IMG/VR virus record: IMGVR_UViG_3300029267_004162
Coordinates: 198,651-262,650 of that record
Strand: one strand, 5' to 3'
DNA: 64,000 nucleotides
Under the pieces are notes generated by a model that was not told the DNA's origin, did no database searches, and was given only the letters and a program-made list of their open reading frames with translations. Position numbers and translations under genes: made by a program. Of this stretch, positions 9,032 through 64,000 are shown piece by piece. Position 1 is the stretch's first letter; the number at the start of each line of letters is the position of its first letter.

Positions 9032-10268
9032 GCTGACCGAGAAATGGAATCGCGTAGTCGATATCATTGATTGTTCACACGCACTGGCGTGGTCATCTCA
9101 CCTCTACCGGATAGGGACTCCTTTGTGGACGACGTTAACCGAGACGGCCGCAGTGTCTCACAGTCCCAAACAAGGGCTGCAATTCATCTTTAACCCGCAA
9201 TTCATGTCTGGTCTCACTGATGTTCAGATAGCGTTCGTTGCCCTGCATGAGGCGTGTCACATTATGTTGGGGCATTGCCACAAGGTAAACTGGATTCGAG
9301 ACCACCACAGATGGAACATAGCTTGTGATATCGTGATTAACGAAATGCTGCTTCGCATGCCAACGTTTGGTGACGAGGGCAGGTCGTTGCAATCAGCATC
9401 TTTCAGGCCCCAGCTTTTGGCTAATAATGGTCTACCCCCTGGCGATTATACCGCCGAGCAGGTGTATGGGCTTCTTGGGGAGACCAATTTATCCAAAAAG
9501 AACACGTTGGACGATCACAAGTTCGGGGAAGATTCTGCTGGTGCGATTGGAGAAGCTATCGACAAACTGTTGGAGGATCCAACTTTTCGCAATCAGGTTG
9601 ACGAATTTTTGAGGGCCGGTAACACGTCATTGGGAAACGAGTTTCTTGTTCCTAGCAAGGCGCAGAATCTTGACAAGGAAAAATACCCTGTAGAGCAGTG
9701 GTTCAAGGACGCCGTTAGGACAGTAATGGGGGAAAGAACAAACGAGGTGTGGGGGCCAATGAATCCCAGGATAGCCGCATTTTGGCCGGATACTTATCTA
9801 CCTGTTGAGGCTGTAAGTTCGGGTCTTAAATACAGACTCCGAGTGTACATGGACACCAGTGGATCGATTGTCTCGGCCCGGTACCGGGGTGGGTATGATT
9901 TGTTGGAAAGGTTCAGTTTAGTTTTGGAAACTGTCCCCACCAACCACTTCGAAATGGAAGTATTCACGTTTGACACAGGGTGGAAGGTAGATCGCCCCTC
10001 TATGGGGGTTTATCCGCTTACGAAAGACCGTAACGGAAAATTTGTTTTCCGGGGCGGGGGAGGCACCTGTTTCAAACAATTAGAAAGACACTGCTTGTCT
10101 GGACTTCGTTATCCAGATTGCATAATGGTTTTAACAGATGGTATGGGTTCTCCAGTCGAGGTGAAATACCCAAATCGGTGGGTATGGCTTCTAACCAGAA
10201 AACCGTACCTTCAGTTGCCTGGGAAAGTTATTAATTTGCCTGTGCCTAAGCCGAGGCAGAGGCGATGA
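9003..10268 (+). CDS. VWA-like domain protein with N-terminal metallopeptidase (DUF2201-type)
   Basis: HEACH (HExxH), NIACD..IN, MDTSGS MIDAS, GGGGTCF, LTDG. Start moved to GTG 9003 after GGAGG; ORF track starts at 8913. Confidence 0.85.
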   Translation: MAPQLLNQFELTEKWNRVVDIIDCSHALAWSSHLYRIGTPLWTTLTETAAVSHSPKQGLQFIFNPQFMSGLTDVQIAFVALHEACHIMLGHCHKVNWIRDHHRWNIACDIVINEMLLRMPTFGDEGRSLQSASFRPQLLANNGLPPGDYTAEQVYGLLGETNLSKKNTLDDHKFGEDSAGAIGEAIDKLLEDPTFRNQVDEFLRAGNTSLGNEFLVPSKAQNLDKEKYPVEQWFKDAVRTVMGERTNEVWGPMNPRIAAFWPDTYLPVEAVSSGLKYRLRVYMDTSGSIVSARYRGGYDLLERFSLVLETVPTNHFEMEVFTFDTGWKVDRPSMGVYPLTKDRNGKFVFRGGGGTCFKQLERHCLSGLRYPDCIMVLTDGMGSPVEVKYPNRWVWLLTRKPYLQLPGKVINLPVPKPRQRR

Positions 10269-16706: not shown

Positions 16707-19634
16707 TTGAGTTTATTGTTAATTTTAAAGTCGAGGTGTAACTTGGGGCTATTAAAATCTGGTCCTAAACAGATGGGGCAAAGGTCTGAGGGTAAAGGCT
16801 ATAAAAGACAGGGGCGGGGTGGATTCCGTGGTGGCAGAGAAAACCCCTGGAATACTCCTTACCCCAAAGTTGATCTGACCAAATCCGGAAGGAAGCTCTA
16901 TCGAGAAAACCGACCCCGCCCAGCCAGGGACCCTGGTCGATTGGCGGGGGCACGCAACCCCAATATTCCAGCAGAATTCTATGCTCTTCCCGAGGAGTGT
17001 GTTACTACCATTATGTTTGTTGGTGACGCACCTGGGAAAGATGATGATTTAGCTAACCGAGTATTCCATGGTAGGGCAGGTCATTTACTTCGGTTCTGTA
17101 TCGAAAATTCCGATCAATCGGCTTATAACATCTATTTGACTAATGTAGTCAACACGATGCCGCCTATCGTAGAACACAATCCTGAGATTCCCACCGAGGA
17201 ATCTATTGAAAGTAACCGAGAGGCCCTACAACATGAGATCGAATTAGTAAGGCCCCGAGTTATCATAGCTCTTGGTCAAATAGCCGTGTCAGCCCTTATT
17301 GATGAAGAAGAGGGGGACAGGCTGGTTAACAAACGGGGGAATTTCTATCCGTGTAAATTTGACCCCGCTATTCGGGTTATGGCGACTTGGTCTCCTTCCA
17401 TGATTGTGAGGAACCCTCATCGGGGATCACAGTTGTTCCTTGACATAACAAAGGCATCAGCAAACACGGCCTTTGACATCTCTAAGATGAGAGAGCAGCC
17501 GGAGGTGAAGTGGGCTAAGACTTTGCCAGAACTACGAGAGGCTGTGGCAGAAGCATCCAAGGCCAAAGTCATGGCGTTTGACTTTGAAACAACCGGTCTA
17601 TCGAGGTGTCCGGGGGATAACGCCATAGTATCCCTGCATTGGTCAACCAATAGCACTGATTGTTGGGGAGTTCTGGTTGATCACCCGGATGCGGGGTGGA
17701 CGAAAAAACAGAAACCCAAAGTACGTCGTTTGCTCAAGGATCTCCTTCGAAACAAAGTTCCCAAAATCGCTCACAACGCCAAGTTTGACTTAGCCATCGC
17801 TCGGGGGTGTCTTGGAATTAGGGTGGCTCAATTCCAGTTCGATACTATGATTATGCAGTATCTTCTGGATGAGAATATTAACGACAAAACGCGGTCGGGT
17901 GGCCCCCCCATGTTTCGGTCTTCGCTAGACGCGATGGTCCAGTATTGGCTCGACTTTGTTGACCCAGATTGGGAAGCGGCAAAGGAACACCGCAGCAGTC
18001 TGATTCGGGTTCCAGGGAAGGATGTGATCTGGTATGGTTCTAAAGACGCCTGCTACACCCTACGTCTGTACAAACTACTGCGGAAGCTAATCGCTGCAAA
18101 AGACTCTGGTCTTCTCAAAACACCAATGGAGATCATGGCCAAACTGTCCTATTCCGTCTCAGAATTAGAGTCGGCTGGTCTGCCCTTTGATATGGATTTG
18201 GCTACAAAGCTTCTGGGTACAAGATGGGAAAACTCGCTTTCGAATCTCATCAACCGCCAAAGAGCGGATCTGTTCACAGATTCCAAAGTTGCCAAATTTA
18301 ACGAGCAGCTTAACGACGAGCAAGTCAAACCCACTCTGTTCAAAGTGTTAGACGACGAAAACGAACAACTGTTTGACCCAATGAAAACCCAGAAACACTT
18401 GGTCCCTTTCTATTATGAATTCCTGCGGTTGCAGCCCCCACCAGGAGCAGAAGAGGGAAAATTCCCCACTGGTAAGGATTTTGAAGAACACTACGGGGAA
18501 ATAGAAGTCGTTCGACAGATTAAGGAATACAAACAGGCCCACAAAATGCGGGGGTTCATCGAGAGTTTTGTGGACGCCGCTGCGATGAATACAGACGAAC
18601 GAATAAGGGCGTCTTTTCGCATTAACTCCACGGTTACTGGCCGGTTGTCTTGTACTGATCCTAATTTGCAACAGATACCGCGTGCTGAAAACGAGATTAA
18701 AACCTGGATAAAACGAATTGTGGCCGTTCCACCGGGGTGGGTTCTCATAGCAGCAGATTACTCGACTGCTGAAGTGAGAATTGGGGCCATAACGAGTAAA
18801 GATGATAAGATGGCTGCTGTGTTTAGGGCCATTAGTAAATTAAAGGCGAAATTCCGTAAGAAGCCCACCGCGAAATTATACGAGCGCATTTTTGTGGATG
18901 GGGAAGGCGACGCCCACAAACAGAATTATTCGCGGGTGTTTGGTATCCCGGTTGGTGAGGTTACCAAAGATCAGCGTACTGAAGCCAAGGGGATTACATT
19001 TGGTTGCATGTTCTCCGGTACCCCCGAGCACCAAATGGCTGGGAAACTTGGCATTCCAGTAGAAGAAGCTAAGATAAAGGTAGATGCTTTCCTTGGTCCC
19101 TTCATTAATCTAACCAAATTCCTCAAGCAGAATAACGCGGCCGCTGACAATGTGGGATTCGTGTACAGCTTGTTTGGACGTCGTCGAACTACGTATGGTG
19201 CGTGGTCTATCAAGAGTGAGCATACTCACGCCCGCAATCAATGTCAAAACTCTGGGATCCAGTCTACTGCCAGTGACGTTCAAATGCTAGCCGTGTATAA
19301 ATTCTGGCAGTACGTTTACACTCATGAAAAGGTTTGGCGAGCCGTTAACGTAGTCCATGACTCCATCTATTTTGTCGTTCCCAGAACAGAACTGAGAGAT
19401 GCTGTTGAGGTAATCGAAGATGTCATGCTCGATCCAGGGTTGGATCGGTACGGGATCGATAAAGAGTTTACGCCCTTGGAAGTGGACATGGAGATTGGTC
19501 TAAACGCCGCTGATACCATCACCTGGGATTTTACTACCCAGCACATGGATTTGATCGAAAAGTGGCTAGACGCTGGGGCTGATCGGGAGTGTAAACCAAA
19601 GAGTCCATTTGCTAAAAAGAAGAAGGAAGGTTGA
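16707..19634 (+). CDS. family A DNA polymerase with N-terminal uracil-DNA-glycosylase-like domain and 3'-5' exonuclease
   Basis: UDG-like FVGDAPG..D....F.G.AG; Exo motifs DFETTG, HNAKFD, YGSKDA; Pol motifs TGRLS..PNLQQIP, DYSTAEVR, R..AK...FG, VHDS. True start may be the internal ATG (MGQRSEG). Confidence 0.95.
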   Translation: MSLLLILKSRCNLGLLKSGPKQMGQRSEGKGYKRQGRGGFRGGRENPWNTPYPKVDLTKSGRKLYRENRPRPARDPGRLAGARNPNIPAEFYALPEECVTTIMFVGDAPGKDDDLANRVFHGRAGHLLRFCIENSDQSAYNIYLTNVVNTMPPIVEHNPEIPTEESIESNREALQHEIELVRPRVIIALGQIAVSALIDEEEGDRLVNKRGNFYPCKFDPAIRVMATWSPSMIVRNPHRGSQLFLDITKASANTAFDISKMREQPEVKWAKTLPELREAVAEASKAKVMAFDFETTGLSRCPGDNAIVSLHWSTNSTDCWGVLVDHPDAGWTKKQKPKVRRLLKDLLRNKVPKIAHNAKFDLAIARGCLGIRVAQFQFDTMIMQYLLDENINDKTRSGGPPMFRSSLDAMVQYWLDFVDPDWEAAKEHRSSLIRVPGKDVIWYGSKDACYTLRLYKLLRKLIAAKDSGLLKTPMEIMAKLSYSVSELESAGLPFDMDLATKLLGTRWENSLSNLINRQRADLFTDSKVAKFNEQLNDEQVKPTLFKVLDDENEQLFDPMKTQKHLVPFYYEFLRLQPPPGAEEGKFPTGKDFEEHYGEIEVVRQIKEYKQAHKMRGFIESFVDAAAMNTDERIRASFRINSTVTGRLSCTDPNLQQIPRAENEIKTWIKRIVAVPPGWVLIAADYSTAEVRIGAITSKDDKMAAVFRAISKLKAKFRKKPTAKLYERIFVDGEGDAHKQNYSRVFGIPVGEVTKDQRTEAKGITFGCMFSGTPEHQMAGKLGIPVEEAKIKVDAFLGPFINLTKFLKQNNAAADNVGFVYSLFGRRRTTYGAWSIKSEHTHARNQCQNSGIQSTASDVQMLAVYKFWQYVYTHEKVWRAVNVVHDSIYFVVPRTELRDAVEVIEDVMLDPGLDRYGIDKEFTPLEVDMEIGLNAADTITWDFTTQHMDLIEKWLDAGADRECKPKSPFAKKKKEG

Positions 19635-19985: not shown

Positions 19986-20240
19986 ATGACACACCCTGCA
20001 TTACAGGCTCTTTCTAGAGGGCCACGAAATGTGATGCGACGATTGTTAACCGGAGCCTCTTTACACATACAGCCCCTTGGGTATCGTCTTTTAGGCGACG
20101 GTCGTCCTCCATGGTGTGTCACCGATTGGTGTGTACGTGATCTGGTATCGCGAGGATTACTTTACACACCTACACTCAGAGCGTACCCAACTGCTCTCGC
20201 TAAGACTTTGCAAAAAGAATTAGTTGGTGGACTTCGTTAG
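19986..20240 (+). CDS. hypothetical protein
   Basis: 84 aa; AAGGAG RBS. Confidence 0.5.
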   Translation: MTHPALQALSRGPRNVMRRLLTGASLHIQPLGYRLLGDGRPPWCVTDWCVRDLVSRGLLYTPTLRAYPTALAKTLQKELVGGLR

Positions 20241-20262
20241 AAAGCCCAGAGGAATGTGAGTT

Positions 20263-20472
20263 ATGTCAACACCAATTGGTACCCTGCCAATTCTTAACGT
20301 CAAGGACCAAGAGCTAGTAGTACATGTAGCCGATGGCAAGTTATTTGTATCTACGGGTGGGGACATGTTGTTGGTTTATGACCAAGACACAAGCATAATC
20401 GCAAGGGGTTTGTCCCGTTCGTTGCGGGCCAGAGTTGCGTCATTCGTTAAATCCTTCTTTATTCATTGGTGA
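20263..20472 (+). CDS. hypothetical protein
   Basis: 69-aa ORF within the operon. Confidence 0.5.
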   Translation: MSTPIGTLPILNVKDQELVVHVADGKLFVSTGGDMLLVYDQDTSIIARGLSRSLRARVASFVKSFFIHW

Positions 20473-20478
20473 AGACGC

Positions 20479-20985
20479 GTGATCACATATTTGGACATGG
20501 ATGGCGTTATCGTTGACTTCAACAAGGGGGTATCGGATAAGTTTGGAGTAGATGTTACGGACGCGGACACCAGGGCTTTACATAAATTGATTGGGGTTAG
20601 TTCCACCCTTTTTTGGAAAACCCTCAATGAATCCAGTACGTGGTGGGCAGAGTTGGAACCCTATCCATGGTTGGAAGAACTAGTGGATTTGATCGAAAAA
20701 CGGGGTTCATGGTATCTTTGTACCGCTGCTGCCTCTCTTGCTGCTCTTCATGGCAGAGTTAGATGGATTAAGAGGATCTTCGGTTCTCAGTTTGATCGGT
20801 TTGTTTTTACTCGGCACAAACATCTGTTAGCTCGACCCCACACATTGCTGATTGATGACACGCCAAAACAGGTAGAGGATTTCAGTAGCGAAGAGGGGGC
20901 TAGAGCTGTGCTTTTTCCTCAGCCCTGGAATCAGGCCACTTATGACATCTCGGAATTTATGGATGTTTTGAGGGTAAGTCAATGA
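20479..20985 (+). CDS. 5'(3')-deoxyribonucleotidase, HAD family
   Basis: LDMDGVIVDF (DxD), KHLL and LLIDD motifs. Confidence 0.88.
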   Translation: MITYLDMDGVIVDFNKGVSDKFGVDVTDADTRALHKLIGVSSTLFWKTLNESSTWWAELEPYPWLEELVDLIEKRGSWYLCTAAASLAALHGRVRWIKRIFGSQFDRFVFTRHKHLLARPHTLLIDDTPKQVEDFSSEEGARAVLFPQPWNQATYDISEFMDVLRVSQ

Positions 20986-22058
20986 GTTCTCATGCGATTG
21001 AAGTCATAACCATTCCTAAGGTGAAAAAACACCCTAACGCGGATACCCTGGGGTTGGTCGATATTTGGGGTTGGTCCTGTTGTATACGGCTGAATGATTT
21101 TAAGGAAGGCGATTTAGCCGTCTATATTCCACCTGACTATATGGTACCTGATATTGAGGCATTTCAGTTCCTAAAGGACTCCAGTAGTGACCGATGGCGT
21201 CGGATTCGGGTACGTCGATTTCGCGGGATTTTGTCGCAGGGTTTAGTATGGTTTGCACCGGAGGGCACCAAAGAGGGTGATGATGTCATGGAACTGATGG
21301 GTATCACCCGCTACGAGCCGCCTCTTCCGACGAGTTTCAACACAGATAATGAAACTGGCCCACATGGTTACTACCCCAAGTATGATGTCGAGAATTACCG
21401 CCGCTATGGCAGCGGTATCTTTGTTGAGGGTGAAGAGATAGTAGTAACCGAGAAGATTCATGGTTGTAACGCTCGGTTTGTTTGTACTCTCCCCAAGTCA
21501 GATAAGACTTGGCCAGATGGTACTCCGATAGGTCCTTGTGACGCTGCCTTCCCCAACGAAAGTGAAACACTAAGGATGTTCTGTGGTAGTCGAACCAATT
21601 GGAAGAAAAAGGACGAAAAGAGTCCCTGGTGGCAAACCCTCCAACAAAATCCGGCTATCGAAACCTGGTGTCGCGCTCATCCTGGACTGGTCCTTTATGC
21701 TGAGGTGTACGGGCAGGTTCAGAGTCTCAAATATGGAGCAAATCGTAATCAGTTCTTTGTAGCAGTTTTTGATATACTTGATCTGGATGGGAATTGGTTA
21801 GAATTTGATGAAGCCTTCACCCTTGTTTCAGAGGTGCCGGGATTGAATTGGGCACCTGTGGTTTATCGGGGTCTCTGTAATGAGGAAGTTCTTGAGCTGG
21901 CGGAGGGGGACAGCCTTATCCCAGGGGCAAACCACCTTAGAGAAGGCGTGGTGGTTCAACCAATTAAAGAGAGACGCGATAATATGTGTGGTCGGGTAAA
22001 GCTCAAAATTGTGAGTAACCAATATCTCGAGGGTAAGAAAAGTCATAGGGGAGCTTAA
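20982..22058 (+). CDS. ATP-dependent RNA ligase (DRB0094/Rnl2-like family)
   Basis: N-terminal HPNADTL...GDLAVYIPPD...RG.LSQG domain; ligase motifs TEKIHG, EVYG, VFD, EGVVV, KLK. Confidence 0.92.
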   Translation: MSSHAIEVITIPKVKKHPNADTLGLVDIWGWSCCIRLNDFKEGDLAVYIPPDYMVPDIEAFQFLKDSSSDRWRRIRVRRFRGILSQGLVWFAPEGTKEGDDVMELMGITRYEPPLPTSFNTDNETGPHGYYPKYDVENYRRYGSGIFVEGEEIVVTEKIHGCNARFVCTLPKSDKTWPDGTPIGPCDAAFPNESETLRMFCGSRTNWKKKDEKSPWWQTLQQNPAIETWCRAHPGLVLYAEVYGQVQSLKYGANRNQFFVAVFDILDLDGNWLEFDEAFTLVSEVPGLNWAPVVYRGLCNEEVLELAEGDSLIPGANHLREGVVVQPIKERRDNMCGRVKLKIVSNQYLEGKKSHRGA

Positions 22059-22078
22059 CAAGCAGACGGATGTAGGGA

Positions 22079-22199
22079 ACGCCGCCGAATCCAGGCGTGA
22101 CAATCAGCAGAGCTGATCCGGTACCGGCGCGGGTATCGGGAGTGGTAAGGGTGAGGAATTCCGCCCGAGGCCCAAGCCCTTACCACTTATTTTCTTTTT
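22079..22199 (+). ncRNA. candidate structured RNA or terminator region (four consecutive hairpins)
   Basis: ACGCC/GGCGT, TCAGC/GCTGA, CCGGTACC/GGTATCGG and 11-bp AGTGGTAAGGG/CCCTTACCACT, followed by a T-rich tract. Confidence 0.4.
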
Positions 22200-22220
22200 A
22201 ATTCGTTAGGAAGGAATGAT

Positions 22221-22323
22221 GCTGTGGCTACATAGCGTGCTGGCTCGGCCACTGGAGAGCGGTATACCCGCCTGTAGGAAAACGAGTGCTGCTTGTACAG
22301 CCGGTAGGAGTCCGGCCCACAAC
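22221..22323 (+). ncRNA. candidate tRNA-like RNA
   Basis: GCTGTGG/CCACAAC acceptor-like stem stacked on a GCCGG-TAGGAGT-CCGGC T-arm-like hairpin; no canonical D or anticodon arms. Confidence 0.45.
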
Positions 22324-22396
22324 TTTAATGGAAGGAGTCACTCATTCGTTAGGAGAAGTAATGGGATTGTAGCTCAGTTGGTAGAGCAACGGCCTT

Positions 22397-23008
22397 CAGG
22401 AAAAATAGGAGCCTTCTGTGTGGAAGATCGAGAGGGTTGTCAGTGCCAGTCCTTACAGCTTCGCTGTTGTAAGGAAGCACCCTAGCTTATGCACATGATT
22501 ACGTGCCTATGCACAGGGTCGTCATGGAGAACATGATCGGTAGACTTCTCGATTCCGATGAAGTGGTTCATCAAGAACGGGAACAGGAAGGATAATCGAC
22601 CTAAGAATCTGGAACTCCTGTCTAACGCCGAACACGCTAGGAGACATGGATTTGACCAGAAACAAAAGTGGTGCGATTTCGTCTGTCCTATTGTGGTGAA
22701 TCGTTCTCAAGAAAACACAATCGAACTCACCTAGGGAAGGGGAGGGGAGATTGTACCTGCTGTAGCAGGTCTTGTGGAACCTCTTTCGCTAGAAAGAGAA
22801 ATCTTCAAAGTGCAACTGCAGAAGTGGAGAGTGCCATATCGGGGAACGTCGTAAGAGTGTACAAGAAGTATGCTCACGATAATCCCGAGGAAACCGTCTG
22901 ACGCGGGATCCGTAGAGGCCATACGCACTCAGCCTGAGATGGTTAAGAGATGGTCCAGCCGACAAGCCAGCCCTAGTGTTGGTGGTTATGGAAACATGAT
23001 GTCGGATG
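22397..23008 (+). mobile_element. group I intron (612 nt) in the tRNA anticodon, with a degenerate HNH ORF
   Basis: 5' exon ends in U and can pair with GGAGCC (22408-22413); terminal G at 23008; core-like ATATCGGGGAAC / AATCCCGAGG (P4), GTAGAGGCCATAC and AAGAGATGGTCC (P7 GGCCAT/ATGGTC). Confidence 0.82.
22418..22901 (+). pseudogene. frameshifted HNH homing endonuclease inside the intron
   Basis: Three frame changes (near 22484, 22572, 22689) join MWKIERVV...RKHP / YVPMHRVVMENMIGRLLDSDEVVH / KNGNRKDNRPKNLELLSNAEHARRH / CGESF...CCSRSC. Confidence 0.85.
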
Positions 23009-23060
23009 TTAAGCCGTGAGTCGTGGGTTCGAGCCCCACCAGTCCCAATTATAAATCTTC

Positions 23061-23133
23061 AGGACCGTAGCTCAGTGTGCAGAGCACCGCCCTCTTAAGG
23101 CGGGGGTCGCAGGTTCAAATCCTGCCGGTCCTA
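23061..23133 (+). tRNA. tRNA-Lys(CUU)
   Basis: AGGACCG/CGGTCCT, GCTC/GAGC, CCGCC-CTCTTAA-GGCGG, GCAGG-TTCAAAT-CCTGC; D-loop lacks the GG; no encoded CCA. Confidence 0.93.
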
Positions 23134-24690
23134 TTTGGGGTCATACGTCTTCTGGGGAATGTCATCCTGCGGTCTTGTCAAAATTGTAATGCCTCATTTG
23201 ATATTTCTGAAGCCGAGGTGGCTCGGGGGAGGGGGAAGTATTGTTCTCAAGCGTGTTATAAAGAGTCCTTCTTAGAGGAGAGGCTTTGTCAATGTGGAAC
23301 AAAGTTTAAAACCAAAAAGGGGAAACGGGGTCGTAAAACTTGTTCTAATCGGTGTGCAAAATCCAGAGTATTGAGCGAAGAAACTCGCGATAAAATTAGC
23401 AACACCTTATCTCGAGGAGAGCATCAGAAGAAGAGGGGGAAATACACCAAAAAATGTCACCGCTGTAAAACCTTATTCGAAACATACTCTTCTAAGAGCC
23501 GTCTTTGTGGGAGTTGTAAGCAATCTAAAAAATGCAAGGTCTGCAACCGGGATTTGGTCCAAAAAGAGTGCGTGTGGTGTAAAAAAGCAGTTAGCCAAAA
23601 GCCCTTACCTAAGCGGTGCCGCAATAAACGAGGGGCCAAGCTGTTGGTAGAAATCTTGAATCTAACTCAGGACAATAACCAACAGCTCTGTGAAGACTTG
23701 GGCGTGGATTTCGTAGTGGGGAAATTGGCTATTGAATACCAGAACCCAAAGTATCCCTATTCCACAGACAACGACCACGAGGATCAGTTGATGTCGCGGG
23801 GGTTTGTTCCTCATCCGATTAGTTGGAGTTTGGAGGGGGAACCTGATTCGAAAGAGCGTTTGCGGCTGGAAGCCGATATCATTGATTTTTGTGCGGCCAA
23901 CGATAATCCGTTTGTATTCACATACGACAAAATCGCTTTTCAAGACCAATACGCCCGTTTACAAAAGACTACTTCCCTTAAAGGCTTCTGCTATTGTAGA
24001 ACGGCCATGGAGTGGTACCACAAACATCTGTGGACAATGAAGACGTCCAGAGCCGAAGTTGATCCCATATCCTATTGGCGGTGCAACCCGGCGAAAATAA
24101 CCGCCAATAGAATAAAATACGCCAATTTGTCTCCAACTTCCCTACGTCGCTATTTTAAGCTTTTTGACATGGTTCCAACCATGTTCCAGGATTCATTAGG
24201 TAAGCGAATGGCCCTCATGGTTGACGGGCCGGAGATAGTGGACCCCTTTGCTGGTTTTGGTGGTCGAATGTTGGGGGCTTGTGCTATTGGGAAGACATAC
24301 ACTGGATTCGACATCAACCCCTGGACTTGTAGTGCTAACGTTATCATGGCTAAGGAAATGGGGCTAACCGGCGTACGTATTCATCACGCTGATTCTTCTC
24401 AGATGGATCCCGTTGAATGTGACGGAGTAATTACTAGTCCGCCTTTCTTCAACAAGGACGAATACGGGGATGGGGGCTATGATTCGCTTGAGCAATATCA
24501 ACGCGCGATTCATGAGACGTTCAAGCGAATCACTCTCCGGGACAAGGCCATCTTGGATTTCAAGCCGGTTCAGGGGTGTTCTTTAGATGATTTTGTCGCG
24601 GCCCTGCCGTATCGGGTCCAGAAGATAGAAGAAGTGAATTTCGGGGGGTTGGGCCGTAAATCTATACACCACTGGGTGGTGGCCTGCTAG
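23077..24690 (+). CDS. multidomain protein: Cys-rich Zn-finger repeats, NUMOD3-like motif, putative PD-(D/E)XK nuclease and amino-methyltransferase
   Basis: CxxC..F..CSxxC repeats; LSEETRDKISNTL; DFVVGKLAIEYQ; VDPFAGFGGRMLGA, FDINP, ITSPPFFNKDEY. The track start overlaps the tRNA, so the real start must be after 23133. Confidence 0.75.
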   Translation: MQSTALLRRGSQVQILPVLFGVIRLLGNVILRSCQNCNASFDISEAEVARGRGKYCSQACYKESFLEERLCQCGTKFKTKKGKRGRKTCSNRCAKSRVLSEETRDKISNTLSRGEHQKKRGKYTKKCHRCKTLFETYSSKSRLCGSCKQSKKCKVCNRDLVQKECVWCKKAVSQKPLPKRCRNKRGAKLLVEILNLTQDNNQQLCEDLGVDFVVGKLAIEYQNPKYPYSTDNDHEDQLMSRGFVPHPISWSLEGEPDSKERLRLEADIIDFCAANDNPFVFTYDKIAFQDQYARLQKTTSLKGFCYCRTAMEWYHKHLWTMKTSRAEVDPISYWRCNPAKITANRIKYANLSPTSLRRYFKLFDMVPTMFQDSLGKRMALMVDGPEIVDPFAGFGGRMLGACAIGKTYTGFDINPWTCSANVIMAKEMGLTGVRIHHADSSQMDPVECDGVITSPPFFNKDEYGDGGYDSLEQYQRAIHETFKRITLRDKAILDFKPVQGCSLDDFVAALPYRVQKIEEVNFGGLGRKSIHHWVVAC

Positions 24691-24712
24691 GTCTTGTTAG
24701 GTTTTTGTTGTA

Positions 24713-24742
24713 TTGACAGATACCCCCCTCTTATGGTATAAT
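24713..24742 (+). promoter_or_regulatory. sigma70-type promoter (extended -10)
   Basis: TTGACA (24713-24718), 18 bp, TG-n-TATAAT (24737-24742); flanks match the 7345 promoter. Confidence 0.85.
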
Positions 24743-24900
24743 GGAAATAGTGAAAGACATTTTATTAAGAGGTTTGGAACAGGTCGCAAGCCAAGCGGTA
24801 GTTCGGATGTCCGAGGATGTCCAGTCCTTGTTATCGACATTATGGACAAATCGATAACTTTCTGAGCTATTCGCTGTTCCCTAAAACCAGGAGGTGCAAT

Positions 24901-25812
24901 GTGTGTGGCCCTTATGGACACGCGTTCGTAAGTGAGATTCCCGTCCAAACACCGGATTTGGATGGTAACTTCGACGATGTTGAAGGAGATGGTGAAACGG
25001 GCAACCCAGTCCCTGTCGCTCCAGATAAAAACCTCCCTAGTGACGGGGCGGTGGGACTTGCGTTGGGAGATGAGCAAAAGAAGACCAGTCGGTCCGAAGC
25101 TGCTCGTAAAGCCTGGGAAACCAGAAAGAAACTGTATGGTCCCGGTGGACGAAAACCGAGATCACTGGTATTACCCAGTGGTCAGGTGTTCTTACCTGGG
25201 TACCCTGCTTTGAACAGTCATCATGAAATTCTTACCCGGCATTCTTTGTCTAATCAAAGACGAAGACGCAGGGCAGGATGGGTTCCATGTGGGCTCCATG
25301 TGCATGATGGTTCTCTGCTTCTTCAAAACAATCGTGGCCACTCCACCCTTCCTCTCGCTGATGTTGATATCAAATGTGCCGAGCAAAATTGGCTCACTAG
25401 TATGCGGGGTGGGGGATTGTGGGATTTCGTAGCGTTCCATGGTGGTCGTCTCCAAGACAAATGGGAATGGATGAAAGAATTCCACAGGTGGTTGGATTTG
25501 CCGTTTGTCTATGGGCAGCTCAAGGGTAGGGTCGCCAAAGACAACTATGTCAAGATGCTGGAACTCCAGGTTTATCTTGATGTCGTGCAAGGAATAACCA
25601 TGCCGGGGGCTGTGCTCTATACTCAGGCCCACATAAGGGGAGACATCTACGCAGAGTTAGATGAGGTGTGTAAAAAGCAAGACACACTGAAAGTGGTTCA
25701 GCAGAAATTGGCTAAAAGCATGATACAACTTTGGGGCCGCGATCCGATGGAAGCCGCTGACACTTTGGTAGATCACCCCAATGACTTTATTGGTGAGCAT
25801 GTTCTTAACTGA
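24901..25812 (+). CDS. hypothetical early protein
   Basis: In-frame GTG at 24901 follows AGGAGG (track start 24817); contains RSEAARKAWETRKK. Confidence 0.65.
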   Translation: MCGPYGHAFVSEIPVQTPDLDGNFDDVEGDGETGNPVPVAPDKNLPSDGAVGLALGDEQKKTSRSEAARKAWETRKKLYGPGGRKPRSLVLPSGQVFLPGYPALNSHHEILTRHSLSNQRRRRRAGWVPCGLHVHDGSLLLQNNRGHSTLPLADVDIKCAEQNWLTSMRGGGLWDFVAFHGGRLQDKWEWMKEFHRWLDLPFVYGQLKGRVAKDNYVKMLELQVYLDVVQGITMPGAVLYTQAHIRGDIYAELDEVCKKQDTLKVVQQKLAKSMIQLWGRDPMEAADTLVDHPNDFIGEHVLN

Positions 25813-25816
25813 CATT

Positions 25817-25980
25817 CGACGAGCGTGGGCGGGCAGTGTTTCCCCGGACACGTCTGCCCCCTCGTCGGACGAATCATTTACTTGGGGAGCAGGGTTGGCA
25901 TCACAAGCCCCTGCTCCCCACTCTTTTTCGCCTCGGGATAGAGTAGGGCATCCACGTACCTACCTCGCCCTGCTCTATCC
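25817..25980 (+). other. structured intergenic region, three strong hairpins (the middle one terminator-like)
   Basis: CGACGAG..GGGCAG/CTGCCC..CTCGTCG; 12-bp TGGGGAGCAGGG/CCCTGCTCCCCA followed by CTCTTTTT; 14-bp GGATAGAGTAGGGC/GCCCTGCTCTATCC. Confidence 0.6.
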
Positions 25981-25998
25981 CACCCCCCCCCTTCGGTA

Positions 25999-26547
25999 AT
26001 GGAAGTGACTCGGCCAATAAGAGAGGTACCGGAGATTCGCATGAAGATCAGTTTAAAATTAACAACTGCTAATTTGAGACGATTGACCCCGGATCAAGTG
26101 CAAACGTCTTTGAAAATGCTAGAAGCCCAAGCGGATCAGATTCGTAAGGATATGGATAGGAATCAAAGGCTACTGGGCCATCTAAACGATCAAATAGGGG
26201 ATTGTGTAAGTGTAGCTCGTTTACTCCGAGATATCGTGTGGATAGGAGAAAAACCTGTTGTTGTGGACTCCCGGCTGGATGAAACTTGTCTATCTAGTCC
26301 TTTTCCTCAGAATAAACGTTTCGGTATCGTGAGGAAAGACTGGAATGGACAGGGAGTAACGGGGTGGACTCTTGATATTTACTTCCCAAACACTCTTCAC
26401 GCGAATACGTGGCTGGGGCCGGGTTGGCGTCGAAAAGAAGCAATAGAATATGCCAAACATTGGGTTGTGAAAGATCGCGTTTTCTGTCGGCAATTCGCAA
26501 AAGATCATCCATCACTGACTGTCTTAAAATCACGTTCCAAAATGTAG
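25999..26547 (+). CDS. hypothetical protein with N-terminal coiled coil
   Basis: 182-aa ORF. Confidence 0.6.
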   Translation: MEVTRPIREVPEIRMKISLKLTTANLRRLTPDQVQTSLKMLEAQADQIRKDMDRNQRLLGHLNDQIGDCVSVARLLRDIVWIGEKPVVVDSRLDETCLSSPFPQNKRFGIVRKDWNGQGVTGWTLDIYFPNTLHANTWLGPGWRRKEAIEYAKHWVVKDRVFCRQFAKDHPSLTVLKSRSKM

Positions 26548-26701
26548 GACACCACAAGAAGCAGCAAACACGTGGGCAGCGTTACAAGAGGACTATGAGC
26601 GGCTGTCAGTTGGGAATTGTAATGATTGGCCTGTTGCTTGCCTTTGGGTCTAGGTTCATCGGGGCGATTGTGAGTGGACTACTTAATTAGGAGTAGGTGC
26701 G

Positions 26702-27217
26702 ATGAAACTACAAGTTGAGTTGGATGATACCAAAGAATTCACCGGGGGTTGGAGTATGGATCAAATCCCTGTTCTTTCGGCACTCCGCGCAGTCACTTTC
26801 GTGGATAAACTCAGTATCCTGGAATTCGGAACAGGAAAGAGCACTGAGCTTCTAGCAAAATTGCTCCGCGACAAGAGCGTTGACTACCGCTATGTTAGCT
26901 ATGAGAACGACCCCACCTTCGTGTGCCCGGATTCCTCAATAGAGACAATCTTCTGGGAAGTCTTTCCGGCTCAGATTGTTGACGGTATATTTGACCTCAT
27001 CATCAATGATGGCCCGAATGGGGTTAGACGAAAACTATGGTATGAGTTACATCGTAAAAATGTGAGGCCAGGGACGGTTCTGCTGCTGGACGGTTTTTAC
27101 CACTACGTAGAATTTTTGGAAGCCTTGGATTTGAACTACACCTATGAGATCCTCTCTGACCATGTAGCGAAAAGGGGAACTTGTTGGCGTGTGGTTAAGG
27201 TTCTGAGTGTGCGATGA
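26702..27217 (+). CDS. class I SAM-dependent methyltransferase-like protein
   Basis: ILEFGTGKST, SYEND, FDLIINDGP, PGTVLLLD. Confidence 0.8.
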   Translation: MKLQVELDDTKEFTGGWSMDQIPVLSALRAVTFVDKLSILEFGTGKSTELLAKLLRDKSVDYRYVSYENDPTFVCPDSSIETIFWEVFPAQIVDGIFDLIINDGPNGVRRKLWYELHRKNVRPGTVLLLDGFYHYVEFLEALDLNYTYEILSDHVAKRGTCWRVVKVLSVR

Positions 27218-27447
27218 GTTGCCAGGCCGCTTTTCAACCGGGTGATGAAGCGTACGCTTTTGATGGGTTTGCTTGGGTTCAGGCAGGCGGAGACCAACCC
27301 GACCAGAATCGCCAGTTTTGGAAGAAGGCAAGGGTGATAAAAACCAGCATCGACAGTTTGAATCGCTCTATTACAGATGTGGTTTTTCTTGACGAGAATC
27401 GTAGATCTTGTAATCACCTCTCTCATTCACTTAGGAGGCCCGCTTGA
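27214..27447 (+). CDS. hypothetical protein
   Basis: 77 aa; start and stop overlap both neighbours. Confidence 0.5.
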   Translation: MSCQAAFQPGDEAYAFDGFAWVQAGGDQPDQNRQFWKKARVIKTSIDSLNRSITDVVFLDENRRSCNHLSHSLRRPA

Positions 27448-27746
27448 AAACGAAAAAGAAAATGGAGACCTTGATTCCTCTTGGAGAACGGGTACTCATC
27501 CGGAAAGACGAGAACAGAACCACCACCAAAGGCGGAATTGAGTTACCTGGTTCTTTGGAAATTCCCACCCTAACTGGTCGGGTAGTAGAAATATCAGCCA
27601 AGGTAGACAGTGACCCCGACTACCCAATCAAGCAGTATGACAGGGTTCTTTTTAATCCGCAGAACGCGGTGCCTGTTGGATTCGAGGCCGATGACAGACT
27701 GATGGTGGTTCAGGTTCAGGATGTTGTGGCTGTTTTTACCAATTGA
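27444..27746 (+). CDS. groES: co-chaperonin GroES
   Basis: LIPLGERVLI...TTKGGIELP...GRVV...DRVLF...DVVAV. Confidence 0.92.
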   Translation: MKTKKKMETLIPLGERVLIRKDENRTTTKGGIELPGSLEIPTLTGRVVEISAKVDSDPDYPIKQYDRVLFNPQNAVPVGFEADDRLMVVQVQDVVAVFTN

Positions 27747-27840
27747 TCTAGGGGATCGAAATGGCAATCGTAAATTGCATACTATGGTCCTACTCACCAC
27801 AAATCTGTGCTTGTTTTCGTGTTTAGGTAGGAGGACACTC

Positions 27841-28509
27841 GTGTCACGGGAAACGTTAAGCGAACTATCACGATCCGCCATCCATGAGGAATTGGGAGTC
27901 TGCGCACGGGACCTGGTAGGTCGTCCTCACCAATTGCCGCCTGATTCACCTTTTCTGGCTATCCTGGAACGGGAGAATCTTTTGGTAGAGGAATTGCGCC
28001 GCCGTGGTCGTCTTGTGGCCAAGCCTGAATCTGACTGGAAATGGCCAAAAGATTCCTCTCAACACAGAGGGGTATTTGCTGCGACTAGGGAAAATTTAGT
28101 TGAGTTTCGGGTAAAATATGGCTTCGGTGTGAGTGGGGACTCTTGTTGTAACTGTGGTATTACCGTTAATCTGCCTGGGTGCCAAGCCGGGTGGTTTTGT
28201 CCGATCTGTGGTCATTTTACCTCTCAGAGTTTCAGTGATTGCCTTCCATTAATTGATGAGCCAACCTTTGGTCCCGATAAGGTTACCATTTTGACCGCCT
28301 GCAATGAGGCTAACTGGATTCAAGGTGAATGTGAAGCTGGTCGTCTTAGACCTAGTGGTGAAAATTTCCATGACTATTACGATTCATTGAAGCCTTACCT
28401 GGATCGGTTGAAACCTGGGGTCTATTGTGATAAAACACACGGGTTCAAATTTGATTTGGAGTATAGCCCTCAAGAGGAGAAGACATGTTCGCTTGGTGGA
28501 ATGATGTAG
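27841..28509 (+). CDS. hypothetical protein with Zn-ribbon (CxxC...CxxC)
   Basis: GTG at 27841 after AGGAGG; CCNCG...CPICG. Confidence 0.6.
   Translation: MSRETLSELSRSAIHEELGVCARDLVGRPHQLPPDSPFLAILERENLLVEELRRRGRLVAKPESDWKWPKDSSQHRGVFAATRENLVEFRVKYGFGVSGDSCCNCGITVNLPGCQAGWFCPICGHFTSQSFSDCLPLIDEPTFGPDKVTILTACNEANWIQGECEAGRLRPSGENFHDYYDSLKPYLDRLKPGVYCDKTHGFKFDLEYSPQEEKTCSLGGMM

Positions 28510-63056: not shown

Positions 63057-64000
<944 letters not shown>

What the first reader, a model, noticed from the sequence alone, without database searches (positions are those of the whole stretch)
22201..22354. tRNA-like RNA with the same leader as the adjacent real tRNA
Seen: 22221-22323 closes with an acceptor-like stem (GCTGTGG/CCACAAC, one mismatch) stacked on a 5-bp/7-nt T-arm-like hairpin (GCCGG TAGGAGT CCGGC). 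The interior has TGGC/GCCA, GCGG/CCGC and TGTA..CGAG/CTTG..TACA helices instead of D and anticodon arms. An 11-nt repeat, ATTCGTTAGGA, lies 20 nt before this element (22201) and 19 nt before tRNA-Lys (22344). Inference: it is processed like a tRNA but is not a decoder. It could be a tRNA mimic or decoy (compare Y-RNA-like or T4/T5 small stable RNAs) acting against anticodon nucleases or tRNA-sensing defences.
Basis: partly seen in the sequence, partly recalled or inferred. Interest (0 to 1): 0.62.

Follow-up and report, generated by a model that had tools for sequence, protein, structure and literature searches.

The report
Unproven tRNA-like spacer beside phage tRNAs
A 103-base non-coding stretch in a giant phage's lysine-tRNA cluster can be drawn with a tRNA-like end and shares its upstream leader with two real tRNA genes, but folding statistics, RNA-family searches and a complete lack of relatives leave it an unproven candidate small RNA.

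Summary
The window belongs to a 262,650-bp orphan jumbo phage. Element X (22221-22323) lies between an RNA ligase terminator and two tRNA-Lys genes.

New here:
- The "adjacent real tRNA" is tRNA-Lys(UUU), split between U34 and U35 by a 612-nt intervening sequence with a decayed HNH endonuclease gene.
- The leader core ATTCGTTA also sits 18 nt upstream of a third RNA gene, tRNA-Met(CAU), 76 kb away. The leader is therefore a real tRNA-associated signal.
- Under strict criteria X is the only acceptor-plus-GC-rich-T-arm site in the genome. Shuffles give 0.1-0.6.

Against the tRNA-like fold:
- No Rfam match, and MFE z = -0.95.
- Acceptor-stem pair probability is 0.15 alone and 0.02-0.03 with flanks, against 0.95-0.99 for four genuine tRNAs of the same phage.
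- X shows no similarity to any tRNA.

Covariation and expression could not be tested. All copies found are identical, the nearest DNA polymerase relative is 27% identical, and no RNA run was listed.

Verdict: a plausible but unproven tRNA-cluster small RNA. The decoy function is speculation.

The parts
20982..22058 (+). RNA ligase gene (DRB0094/Rnl-type, PF09414), immediately upstream of the non-coding gap
   Evidence: PHROG 968 E=1.9e-39. TIGR02306 at 134 bits, below its 151-bit cut-off. Pfam PF09414/PF21189.
22062..22200 (+). Strongly structured 3' region of the ligase transcript: four hairpins, the last (22140-22188) followed by a U-tract, which looks like an intrinsic terminator
   Evidence: MFE -57.1 kcal/mol, z = -3.22, 0 of 200 shuffles as stable. 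Hairpin coordinates. The simple terminator scan missed it because the apical region exceeds its loop limit.
22201..22220 (+). Leader copy 1: ATTCGTTAGGA (22201-22211) plus 9 nt that end at the first base of X
   Evidence: Aligned with copy 2, 16 of 19 positions are identical with one indel, and all differences lie in the last 9 nt.
22221..22323 (+). Element X, the candidate 103-nt non-decoding RNA. Closing stem 22221-22227/22317-22323; interior either one long imperfect arm (MFE) or three short hairpins (reader)
   Evidence: No Rfam family. No gene called here by JGI or ENA annotation of identical contigs.
22219..22238 (+). Competing local hairpin (8 bp, loop GCUA) that sequesters the 5' strand of the proposed acceptor stem
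   Evidence: It appears in the MFE of every construct that includes flanks.
22300..22316 (+). T-arm-like hairpin GCCGG-UAGGAGU-CCGGC. The loop has U at position 1 and A at position 5 but lacks the UUC(R)A consensus, and it carries an AGGAG (Shine-Dalgarno-like) motif
   Evidence: Pair probability 0.45-0.8 depending on context. It is the only hairpin with a TAGGAGT loop and a stem of at least 5 bp in the genome.
22344..22362 (+). Leader copy 2: ATTCGTTAGGA plus 8 nt that end at the first base of tRNA-Lys(UUU)
22363..22396 (+). tRNA-Lys(UUU) 5' exon, running through U34
   Evidence: ARAGORN with introns allowed. Uninterrupted relatives L020/L021. The joined exons give a 73-nt tRNA-Lys(ttt) that is 66/73 identical to Planctomycetota tRNA-Lys.
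22397..23008 (+). 612-nt intervening sequence in the anticodon. U precedes the 5' junction, G is the last base, and an internal GGAGCC (22408-22413) can pair with the exon end. It carries a decayed HNH homing-endonuclease gene in at least three frame pieces
   Evidence: HNH PHROG hits E=1.2e-8 (22558-22731), 2.2e-5 (22491-22592) and about 1e-2 (22668-22898) in different frames. The 3' part is structured, z = -2.33. There is no Rfam group I hit even at E<=10, so the intron class is inferred, not shown.
23009..23047 (+). tRNA-Lys(UUU) 3' exon (U35 to A73); no encoded CCA
23061..23133 (+). tRNA-Lys(CUU), 13 nt after the first tRNA and without the leader motif
   Evidence: ARAGORN. Rfam tRNA 71.5 bits.
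23218..24690 (+). 490-aa protein downstream of the tRNAs. Its C-terminal third weakly resembles the Trm-G10/Trm11-type methyltransferase family TIGR01177; function open
   Evidence: TIGR01177 E=3.6e-6, 26.5 bits, far below cut-off. Weak PHROG 'DNA methyltransferase' match.

Best explanation
X is most likely a non-decoding spacer RNA of the phage's lysine-tRNA transcription unit.

Inferred steps, none shown:
1. X is transcribed together with tRNA-Lys(UUU) and tRNA-Lys(CUU) downstream of the RNA-ligase terminator.
2. Its 5' end is set by the same leader-dependent step that serves tRNA-Lys(UUU) and tRNA-Met. This would be either a cut within or next to ATTCGTTA followed by RNase P trimming at -1/+1, or initiation just downstream of the motif.
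3. Once freed from its flanks, X can close into an acceptor/T-arm-like minihelix carrying one long imperfect arm. That would allow RNase P and RNase Z to release an RNA of about 103 nt.

X cannot decode. What the free RNA does is unknown. A role as a processing or punctuation element, or as a stable by-product like the T4 tRNA-region small RNAs, is more economical than a decoy role.
For: - X lies in a 304-nt gene-free gap in a gene-dense phage, directly upstream of two tRNAs.
- The leader core ATTCGTTA stands at -20, -19 and -18 from X, tRNA-Lys(UUU) and tRNA-Met(CAU). It has only 15 copies in 525 kb of strand.
- The two local leaders are identical over 11 nt and diverge only in the following 9 nt. 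X itself has no similarity to the tRNA or the intron. The leader therefore looks either maintained or separately placed in front of an unrelated body.
- X and tRNA-Lys(UUU) share U(-1)/G(+1), and a U-rich trailer follows X's closing stem.
- X is the only site in the genome with an all-G:C 5-bp/7-nt hairpin stacked on a 7-bp Watson-Crick stem with at most 1 mismatch (shuffles 0.6, or 0.1 with a U...A loop). A slightly looser scan recovers three real tRNAs plus X and one truncated tRNA, against 0.7 expected.
- The MFE of the isolated 103 nt keeps the acceptor (5 bp) and the T-arm.
Against: - Fold stability is not better than shuffles: z = -0.95, with 29 of 200 shuffles as stable.
- Acceptor pair probability is 0.15 alone and 0.02-0.03 with 10-30 nt flanks, against 0.95-0.99 for four genuine tRNAs and 0.76-0.77 for two aberrant tRNA-like sequences of the same genome.
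- A competing 8-bp hairpin (22219-22238) takes the 5' strand of the acceptor stem.
- There is a C2.A71 mismatch, the T-loop lacks the UUC consensus, and there is no D-loop partner.
- No Rfam family matches, including the tRNA clan and YrlA.
- There are no homologues, so no covariation. No RNA run was listed.
- At tRNA-Met the leader core overlaps the last codons of a small ORF, so it need not be a dedicated RNA signal.
Confidence: 0.35

Rival explanations
1. X is non-functional spacer DNA. The closing stem and hairpin are chance pairings in a GC-rich stretch. The duplicated leader is a by-product of a rearrangement or insertion next to the tRNA-Lys leader, so only the leader and the tRNAs are functional.
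For: - z = -0.95.
- The acceptor stem has low probability and several near-isoenergetic folds compete.
- 0.1-0.6 equally good acceptor/T-arm sites are expected per shuffled genome, and about 15 chance 11-mer local repeats per genome.
- No family match and no homologue.
- The locus shows decay elsewhere: a homing-endonuclease gene broken in at least three frames, a truncated tRNA at c136803-136868 and an aberrant one at 20421-20513.
Against: - A 160-nt useless spacer is unusual in a compact phage.
- The perfect 11-nt leader next to a diverged 9-nt tail suggests constraint on both copies. My estimate for such clustering of the differences is p about 0.03.
- X is the only strict hit in the genome, and it lies within 150 nt of a tRNA.
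Confidence: 0.32
2. The 22201-22362 region is a protein- or ribosome-binding leader RNA rather than a tRNA mimic. Its repeated UAGGA(G/A) motifs, one of them displayed in the 7-nt hairpin loop, would bind a GGA-recognising factor. Candidates are a CsrA/Rsm-type protein, the 30S anti-Shine-Dalgarno sequence, or a RegB-like GGAG-specific nuclease. Binding would control or titrate something during infection.
For: - TAGGA occurs 4 times in 163 nt (expected 0.13), AGGA 6 times (0.79) and AGGAG 3 times (0.17).
- This is the densest TAGGA cluster on either strand of the genome.
- One motif sits in a stable hairpin loop.
- T4 RegB cuts GGAG when the GGA triplet is unpaired (PMC3014915).
Against: - Two of the four TAGGA copies belong to the duplicated leader and are not independent.
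- The tRNA-Met leader copy lacks the AGGA part.
- No Csr/Rsm family match is significant: RsmY E=4.2, and over the tRNA rather than X.
- The host is unknown. tRNA similarity points to Planctomycetota, and I did not test whether a CsrA-type protein occurs there.
- No binding protein was identified in the phage.
Confidence: 0.12
3. X is a decayed tRNA gene: a pseudogene left from a duplicated leader-plus-tRNA unit.
For: - The leader is duplicated.
- Acceptor and T-arm remnants sit in the right order and spacing relative to the leader.
- The phage carries other degenerate tRNA-like genes.
- ARAGORN at 60% threshold can force a long-variable-arm cloverleaf on 22237-22324.
Against: - No tRNA covariance-model hit even at E<=10, whereas the truncated tRNA at c136803 still scores 33.4 bits.
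- No residual similarity to tRNA-Lys or to anything else nearby.
- At 103 nt, X is 30 nt longer than a tRNA.
- A leader this well preserved (16/19) is hard to reconcile with a body decayed beyond recognition.
Confidence: 0.1
4. X is the 5' part of a small protein gene: the ORF 22216-22485 (89 aa), with ATG preceded by AGGAAGGA.
For: An open frame of 89 codons starts at an ATG behind a Shine-Dalgarno-like motif.
Against: - The frame runs through leader 2, the tRNA-Lys 5' exon and the start of the intervening sequence, where it merges with a fragment of the dead HNH gene.
- No PHROG match.
- Neither the JGI nor the ENA gene calls on identical contigs include it.
Confidence: 0.03

Closest known systems
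Phage T4 RNAC and RNAD (species 1 and 2 RNAs) of the T4 tRNA gene region
   Same: Small non-decoding RNAs encoded among phage tRNA genes, with no known role (PMC3014915). From my own recollection of the older T4 literature, not checked here, they are cut out of tRNA precursors by tRNA-processing enzymes.
   Different: There is no sequence relationship: blastn of X against 50,697 phage records found nothing. The T4 RNAs are demonstrated stable transcripts. X has no expression data.
t-elements of plant mitochondria (tRNA-like processing signals)
   Same: Non-canonical tRNA-like folds built around an acceptor stem and T-arm, cut by RNase P and RNase Z, sometimes released as stable small RNAs that receive CCA nucleotides (PMC1920247).
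   Different: t-elements keep the conserved GGTTCRANYCC T-arm and have mapped ends. X has GCCGG-UAGGAGU-CCGGC and no mapped ends. They come from a different domain of life.
Bacterial Y RNA-like YrlA (Rfam RF02553), partner of Ro/Rsr, also noted in some jumbo phages
   Same: A non-decoding RNA with a tRNA-like module, linked to RNA repair genes. Jumbo phages with a TROVE protein and RNA ligases are described in PMC7824862.
   Different: The YrlA model scores 15.5 bits (E=6.4, gathering 69), and over 22275-22418 rather than X. No Ro/TROVE gene was identified near X.
Canonical tRNA / tRNA clan (RF00005, tmRNA)
   Same: A 7-bp closing stem stacked on a 5-bp/7-nt hairpin, a leader shared with real tRNAs, and no encoded CCA, like every tRNA of this phage.
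   Different: No D arm, no anticodon arm, no UUC in the T-loop, no covariance-model hit, and ARAGORN is negative at normal thresholds.
L012:1079-1155, a tRNA-like non-decoder in an unrelated viral contig (IMGVR_UViG_3300021180_000040; identical in L003)
   Same: An identical 17-nt T-arm (GCCGG-TAGGAGT-CCGGC) directly followed by the 3' strand of a 7-bp closing stem. It is intergenic and has no anticodon loop.
   Different: It folds convincingly as a four-arm cloverleaf (z = -3.40, MFE 63% of the ensemble). It is 77 nt, not next to tRNAs, and shares no other sequence with X. The shared 17-mer is compatible with chance: most of the more than 120 metagenome hits lie in coding or otherwise unrelated sequence.

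Membership tests
tRNA (Rfam RF00005) | Covariance-model score at or above the gathering threshold (29 bits) | tested here: not met
   No tRNA hit on 22221-22323, even in E<=10 mode on a 1.4-kb slice. Genuine tRNAs of the phage score 60-73 bits, and even the truncated tRNA-like c136803 scores 33.
tRNA (Rfam RF00005) | Cloverleaf with D arm and a 7-nt anticodon loop | tested here: not met
   ARAGORN default, intron and mitochondrial modes are negative. At 60% threshold it gives only a 2-nt 'anticodon' model with 5 of 7 acceptor pairs.
tRNA-like processing elements (t-element type) | Acceptor stem coaxial with a T-arm of 5 bp and a 7-nt loop | tested here: inconclusive
   It can be drawn (6 of 7 and 5 of 5 pairs) and is unique in the genome under strict rules. 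Mean acceptor pair probability is only 0.15, or 0.02-0.03 with flanks.
tRNA-like processing elements (t-element type) | Conserved T-arm sequence GGTTCRANYCC | tested here: not met
   The sequence is CCGGTAGGAGTCCGG. Only the U...A positions of the T-loop motif are kept.
tRNA-like processing elements (t-element type) | Transcript ends coinciding with the element's ends; non-templated C/CCA at the 3' end | not testable with these tools
   No RNA run was listed for this sequence.
Phage tRNA-region small stable RNAs (T4 RNAC/RNAD kind) | Encoded within a phage tRNA gene cluster, non-decoding | tested here: met
   X lies 40 nt upstream of tRNA-Lys(UUU), which is followed by tRNA-Lys(CUU).
Phage tRNA-region small stable RNAs (T4 RNAC/RNAD kind) | Sequence homology to the T4 RNAs | tested here: not met
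   blastn of 22195-22345 against the phage record collection at E<=10 found no match.
YrlA / Y RNA-like (RF02553) | Covariance-model score at or above gathering (69 bits) | tested here: not met
   15.5 bits, E=6.4, and offset onto the neighbouring tRNA.
YrlA / Y RNA-like (RF02553) | Ro/TROVE (Rsr) protein encoded nearby | not tested
   Neighbouring ORFs from 19986 to 28509 gave no such match in PHROGs or NCBIfam. The rest of the genome was not screened for TROVE.
Group I intron (for the 612-nt insertion in the adjacent tRNA-Lys) | Rfam Intron_gpI core (P3-P9) | tested here: not met
   No hit at E<=10, on either the 1.4-kb slice or the 3' 371 nt alone.
Group I intron (for the 612-nt insertion in the adjacent tRNA-Lys) | U before the 5' splice site paired to G of an internal guide; terminal G; homing-endonuclease ORF | tested here: met
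   The junctions read ...CTT|CAGG...GGATG|TTAA. GGAGCC at 22408-22413 can pair with exon GGCCUU, with U.G at the junction (sequence). HNH fragments are present. The joined exons give a canonical tRNA-Lys(UUU).

The most novel reading that the evidence does not exclude
X is an expressed, RNase P/Z-processed tRNA mimic with a non-canonical AGGAG-bearing T-loop. In this reading the phage makes it alongside its own two tRNA-Lys genes and an RNA ligase, to occupy or mislead a host tRNA-directed defence such as a tRNA-Lys anticodon nuclease of the PrrC/RloC or PARIS type. That would make the locus a three-part counter-defence island of decoy, replacement tRNAs and repair ligase.
Probability: 0.06. 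Interest if true: 0.75.

Novelty: new member of a known kind. Interest (0 to 1): 0.3.

Why it matters
If X is a real processed RNA, it adds an example from an uncultured jumbo phage to the small, still unexplained class of non-decoding RNAs embedded in phage tRNA clusters (T4 RNAC/RNAD). It would sit in a telling context: an RNA ligase, two lysine tRNAs, and one of those tRNAs interrupted exactly in the anticodon. That would make it a natural test case for whether such RNAs act in the conflict over tRNA-Lys between phages and anticodon nucleases.

As it stands, the firmer results are contextual:
- a tRNA-Lys(UUU) gene split by a 612-nt intervening sequence with a dead homing-endonuclease gene;
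- a short leader motif shared by three RNA genes of the phage.

Tried and rejected
**RNA-family and tRNA searches**
- Rfam in gathering and E<=10 modes found nothing for X.
- ARAGORN in default, intron, mitochondrial, tmRNA and relaxed modes found nothing credible.

**Search for relatives**
- Relatives were sought through the RNA ligase, the downstream 496-aa ORF and the DNA polymerase in viral contigs. Only the same phage came back, at 100% identity.
- Nine contigs carry the identical ligase. The two fetched are base-for-base identical over 7 kb.
- The ligase's best relatives (54% identity) show no synteny. The DNA polymerase's best relative is 27% identical. Covariation analysis is therefore impossible for now.
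- blastn of X against phage records found no match.

**The 17-nt T-arm elsewhere**
- It has 12 exact matches in viral contigs and more than 120 in metagenome contigs. None has further similarity to X. Closing-stem complementarity is at about the chance rate (13 of 111, against about 10 expected, with G-U allowed), and several hits are coding.
- The one convincing look-alike (L012/L003) is itself an orphan.

**Other tests**
- Paralogue or antisense targets of X within the genome: only chance-level 11-16-mers.
- Similarity of X to the tRNA-Lys exons, the intervening sequence or the upstream structured region: none.
- Sigma-70-type promoter on the + strand between 21800 and 23400: none.
- Expression: no RNA run was listed.

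**Readings considered and dropped**
- X as a small mobile insertion with an 11-bp target duplication and the 'acceptor' as terminal inverted repeats. The inverted repeats are only 7 bp, do not sit at the ends, and a third leader copy exists elsewhere.
- A hammerhead or other small ribozyme. There are no Rfam hits and no core motifs, even though the same 17-nt hairpin forms stem I of a hammerhead in L007/L010/L014.

Full report
**Setting**

The window is bases 198651-262650 of a 262,650-bp IMG/VR virus record of 46.6% G+C. It is a jumbo phage with no close relatives. The RNA ligase next to the finding has a best relative at 54% identity, and the DNA polymerase 2.6 kb upstream has one at 27%. 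Every other contig that carries these genes is the same phage at 100% nucleotide identity.

The local order on the + strand is:
- RNA ligase, 20982-22058;
- a strongly structured 140 nt ending in a terminator-like hairpin and U-tract, 22062-22200 (z = -3.22);
- leader copy 1, 22201-22220;
- element X, 22221-22323;
- a 20-nt spacer;
- leader copy 2, 22344-22362;
- tRNA-Lys(UUU);
- tRNA-Lys(CUU), 23061-23133;
- a 490-aa protein with a weak methyltransferase-like C-terminus.

Gene callers on identical contigs place no gene between 22058 and 23077.

**The adjacent tRNA**

The tRNA that starts at 22363 is real but split. ARAGORN finds it only when introns are allowed, and Rfam gives a sub-threshold partial hit. 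Uninterrupted relatives in other viral contigs read ...ACGGCCTTTTAAGCCGT.... More than 120 bacterial genomes carry the same 36-nt core.

Joining 22363-22396 to 23009-23047 gives a 73-nt tRNA-Lys(UUU). It is 66/73 identical to Planctomycetota tRNA-Lys.

The 612 nt in between (22397-23008) follow a U and end in G. An internal GGAGCC can pair with the exon end. The insert carries HNH endonuclease fragments in at least three different frames, so that gene is dead.

These features fit a group I-type intron with a decayed homing-endonuclease gene. Rfam's group I model gives no hit, so the class and the splicing are inferred.

**Checking the observation**

Two questions remain: whether they exceed chance, and whether they form the proposed structure.

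- The bare pattern (a 5-bp/7-nt hairpin followed by a 7-bp closing stem, G-U allowed, one mismatch) occurs at about 360 sites in this genome.
- At the quality actually seen in X (five G:C pairs in the hairpin, Watson-Crick closing stem with one mismatch, total length 60-130), X is the only site on either strand. Dinucleotide shuffles give 0.6 per genome, or 0.1 if the loop must carry U at position 1 and A at position 5.
- A slightly looser version recovers three genuine tRNAs, X and one truncated tRNA, against 0.7 expected. The scan therefore does pick tRNA-like objects.
- X lies within 150 nt of a tRNA, so the arrangement is unlikely to be pure chance. My estimate is on the order of 1e-2.

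**The leader**

An exact 11-mer repeated within 300 nt is expected about 15 times per genome, so the repeat alone proves little. Three further observations make it meaningful:

1. The similarity extends to the first base of both RNAs. Sixteen of 19 aligned positions are identical, and all differences fall in the last nine.
2. X and tRNA-Lys(UUU) both have U at -1 and G at +1.
3. The core ATTCGTTA also lies 18 nt upstream of tRNA-Met(CAU) at genome position c144392-144465. That matches the -20 and -19 positions at X and tRNA-Lys. With 15 copies of the 8-mer in the genome, I estimate the chance of such placement before one of the other tRNAs at about 1e-3.

At tRNA-Met the motif overlaps the last codons of a small ORF. 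It is therefore more likely a processing site or a compact initiation signal than a conventional promoter, and no sigma-70-like promoter is predicted here.

X has no detectable similarity to the tRNA, to the intervening sequence or to the upstream region. A recent duplication of a whole leader-plus-tRNA unit does not explain the arrangement. The leader stands in front of an unrelated body.

**The fold**

- The 103-nt MFE (-39.7 kcal/mol) is not more stable than shuffles: z = -0.95, with 29 of 200 as good. It represents 7% of the ensemble.
The MFE replaces the three interior hairpins by one long imperfect arm and keeps 5 bp of the closing stem plus the T-arm.
- Mean pair probability of the closing stem is 0.15 for X alone and 0.02-0.03 with 10-30 nt of flank. 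The same calculation gives 0.95-0.99 for four genuine tRNAs of this phage, and 0.76-0.77 for two aberrant tRNA-like sequences.
- With flanks present, an 8-bp hairpin (22219-22238) captures the 5' strand of the stem.
- The T-arm hairpin is moderately supported (0.45-0.8).
- The loop UAGGAGU keeps only the U...A of the T-loop motif.

**Families and relatives**

Rfam has nothing for X at gathering thresholds or at E<=10. The only overlapping entry is a meaningless YrlA alignment of 15.5 bits. blastn against 50,697 phage records finds nothing.

Exact searches for the 17-nt T-arm returned 12 viral and more than 120 metagenomic sites. None shares further sequence with X. The frequency of closing-stem complementarity is about what chance predicts, and some hits are inside long ORFs.

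One hit is interesting in itself. L012:1079-1155 (identical in L003) is an intergenic 77-nt cloverleaf with a 4-nt 'anticodon' loop and the identical T-arm, at z = -3.40. It too is an orphan and cannot be shown to be homologous to X.

No RNA sequencing run was listed for the locus.

**Other readings**

- *Motif cluster.* The region is the densest cluster of TAGGA in the genome: four in 163 nt, against 0.13 expected. AGGA and AGGAG are also enriched. This allows a rival in which the RNA binds a GGA-recognising protein or the ribosome. However, two of the four motifs are the duplicated leader, and the tRNA-Met leader lacks them.
- *Small ORF.* An 89-codon ORF starts at 22216 behind a Shine-Dalgarno-like motif. 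It runs through the tRNA exon into the dead HNH gene and has no support.
- *tRNA pseudogene.* This is hard to square with a well-kept leader and a body that scores nothing against the tRNA model. The phage's truncated tRNA at c136803-136868 still scores 33.4 bits.

**Conclusion**

I rank a co-transcribed, leader-dependent, non-decoding spacer RNA first (0.35). It may be released through a marginal acceptor/T-arm minihelix. Non-functional spacer comes almost level (0.32).

The decoy idea fits the neighbourhood of RNA ligase plus two tRNA-Lys genes. RNA repair and tRNA supplementation as jumbo-phage counter-defences are reviewed in PMC7824862. No feature of X itself supports the idea.

The closest known kinds are the T4 tRNA-region small RNAs RNAC/RNAD, whose roles are still unknown (PMC3014915), and tRNA-like t-elements that serve as RNase P/Z signals (PMC1920247). 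X meets the positional criterion of the first. It fails the sequence criteria of the second and of the tRNA and YrlA families.

Noticed in passing
window 22363-23047: tRNA-Lys(UUU) is interrupted between U34 and U35 by a 612-nt intervening sequence (22397-23008). The insert has group I-like boundaries and an HNH homing-endonuclease gene broken into at least three frame pieces. Default ARAGORN and Rfam gathering mode both miss the gene, and Rfam's group I model does not match.
   Followed up: yes
G000:C1:144476-144483 (minus strand), outside the window: A third copy of the leader core ATTCGTTA lies 18 nt upstream of tRNA-Met(CAU) (c144392-144465). It overlaps the last codons (W-I-R-Y-stop) of a small upstream ORF.
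   Followed up: partly
window 22062-22200: The 140 nt after the RNA ligase stop codon form four stable hairpins (z = -3.22). The last is a 49-nt terminator-like hairpin with a U-tract. There is a weak, sub-threshold resemblance to the Rfam cow-rumen-4 motif (24.4 bits, E=0.26) over 22139-22219.
   Followed up: partly
G000:C1:136802-136868 (minus strand), outside the window: A 66-67-nt tRNA-like gene with a canonical acceptor, D arm and GTGGG-TTCGAGT-CCCAC T-arm, but only 16 nt where the anticodon arm and variable loop should be. Rfam tRNA scores 33.4 bits, above gathering. It is either a genuine non-decoding tRNA-like RNA or a truncated tRNA.
   Followed up: partly
G000:C1:20421-20513 (plus strand), outside the window: A 93-nt tRNA-like sequence with a canonical T-arm and a 7-bp 'anticodon' stem capped by a 20-nt loop. 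ARAGORN calls it tRNA-Met(cat) with a 15-nt intron. Rfam's tRNA model does not match it.
   Followed up: partly
L012:1079-1155 (same in L003), IMGVR_UViG_3300021180_000040: An intergenic 77-nt cloverleaf-like RNA in an unrelated viral contig. It has a 7-bp acceptor, a D-like arm, a 6-bp arm with a 4-nt loop (no anticodon) and a T-arm identical to X's 17-mer. z = -3.40. No Rfam match and no relatives found.
   Followed up: partly
L007:~340-420, L010:~8960-9050, L014:~3030-3110: Three viral contigs carry a hammerhead-ribozyme-like core (CUGAUGA...GAAAC...GUC) in which the same GCCGG-UAGGAGU-CCGGC hairpin forms stem I. This was recognised by eye from the flanks and not checked with Rfam.
   Followed up: no
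window 22201-22362: This is the densest TAGGA cluster in the whole genome: four copies in 163 nt against 0.13 expected. AGGA occurs 6 times and AGGAG 3 times.
   Followed up: partly
window 23218-24690: The 490-aa protein directly after the tRNAs has a C-terminal third that weakly matches the Trm-G10/Trm11-type methyltransferase family TIGR01177 (E=3.6e-6, far below cut-off). It could be an RNA- or DNA-modifying enzyme.
   Followed up: no
window 63774-64000 and genome start (G000:C1:1-~300): An imperfect (GAGGAC)n / 42-nt-period purine-rich tandem repeat lies at both ends of the linear record. It is probably one acidic-repeat coding region split by the arbitrary start of a circularly permuted assembly.
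   Followed up: no
window 16707-19634: The DNA polymerase is a UDG-exonuclease-PolA fusion (PF03167, PF01612, PF00476). Its nearest relative among 5.8 billion proteins is only 27% identical, so this phage lineage is essentially unsampled.
   Followed up: partly
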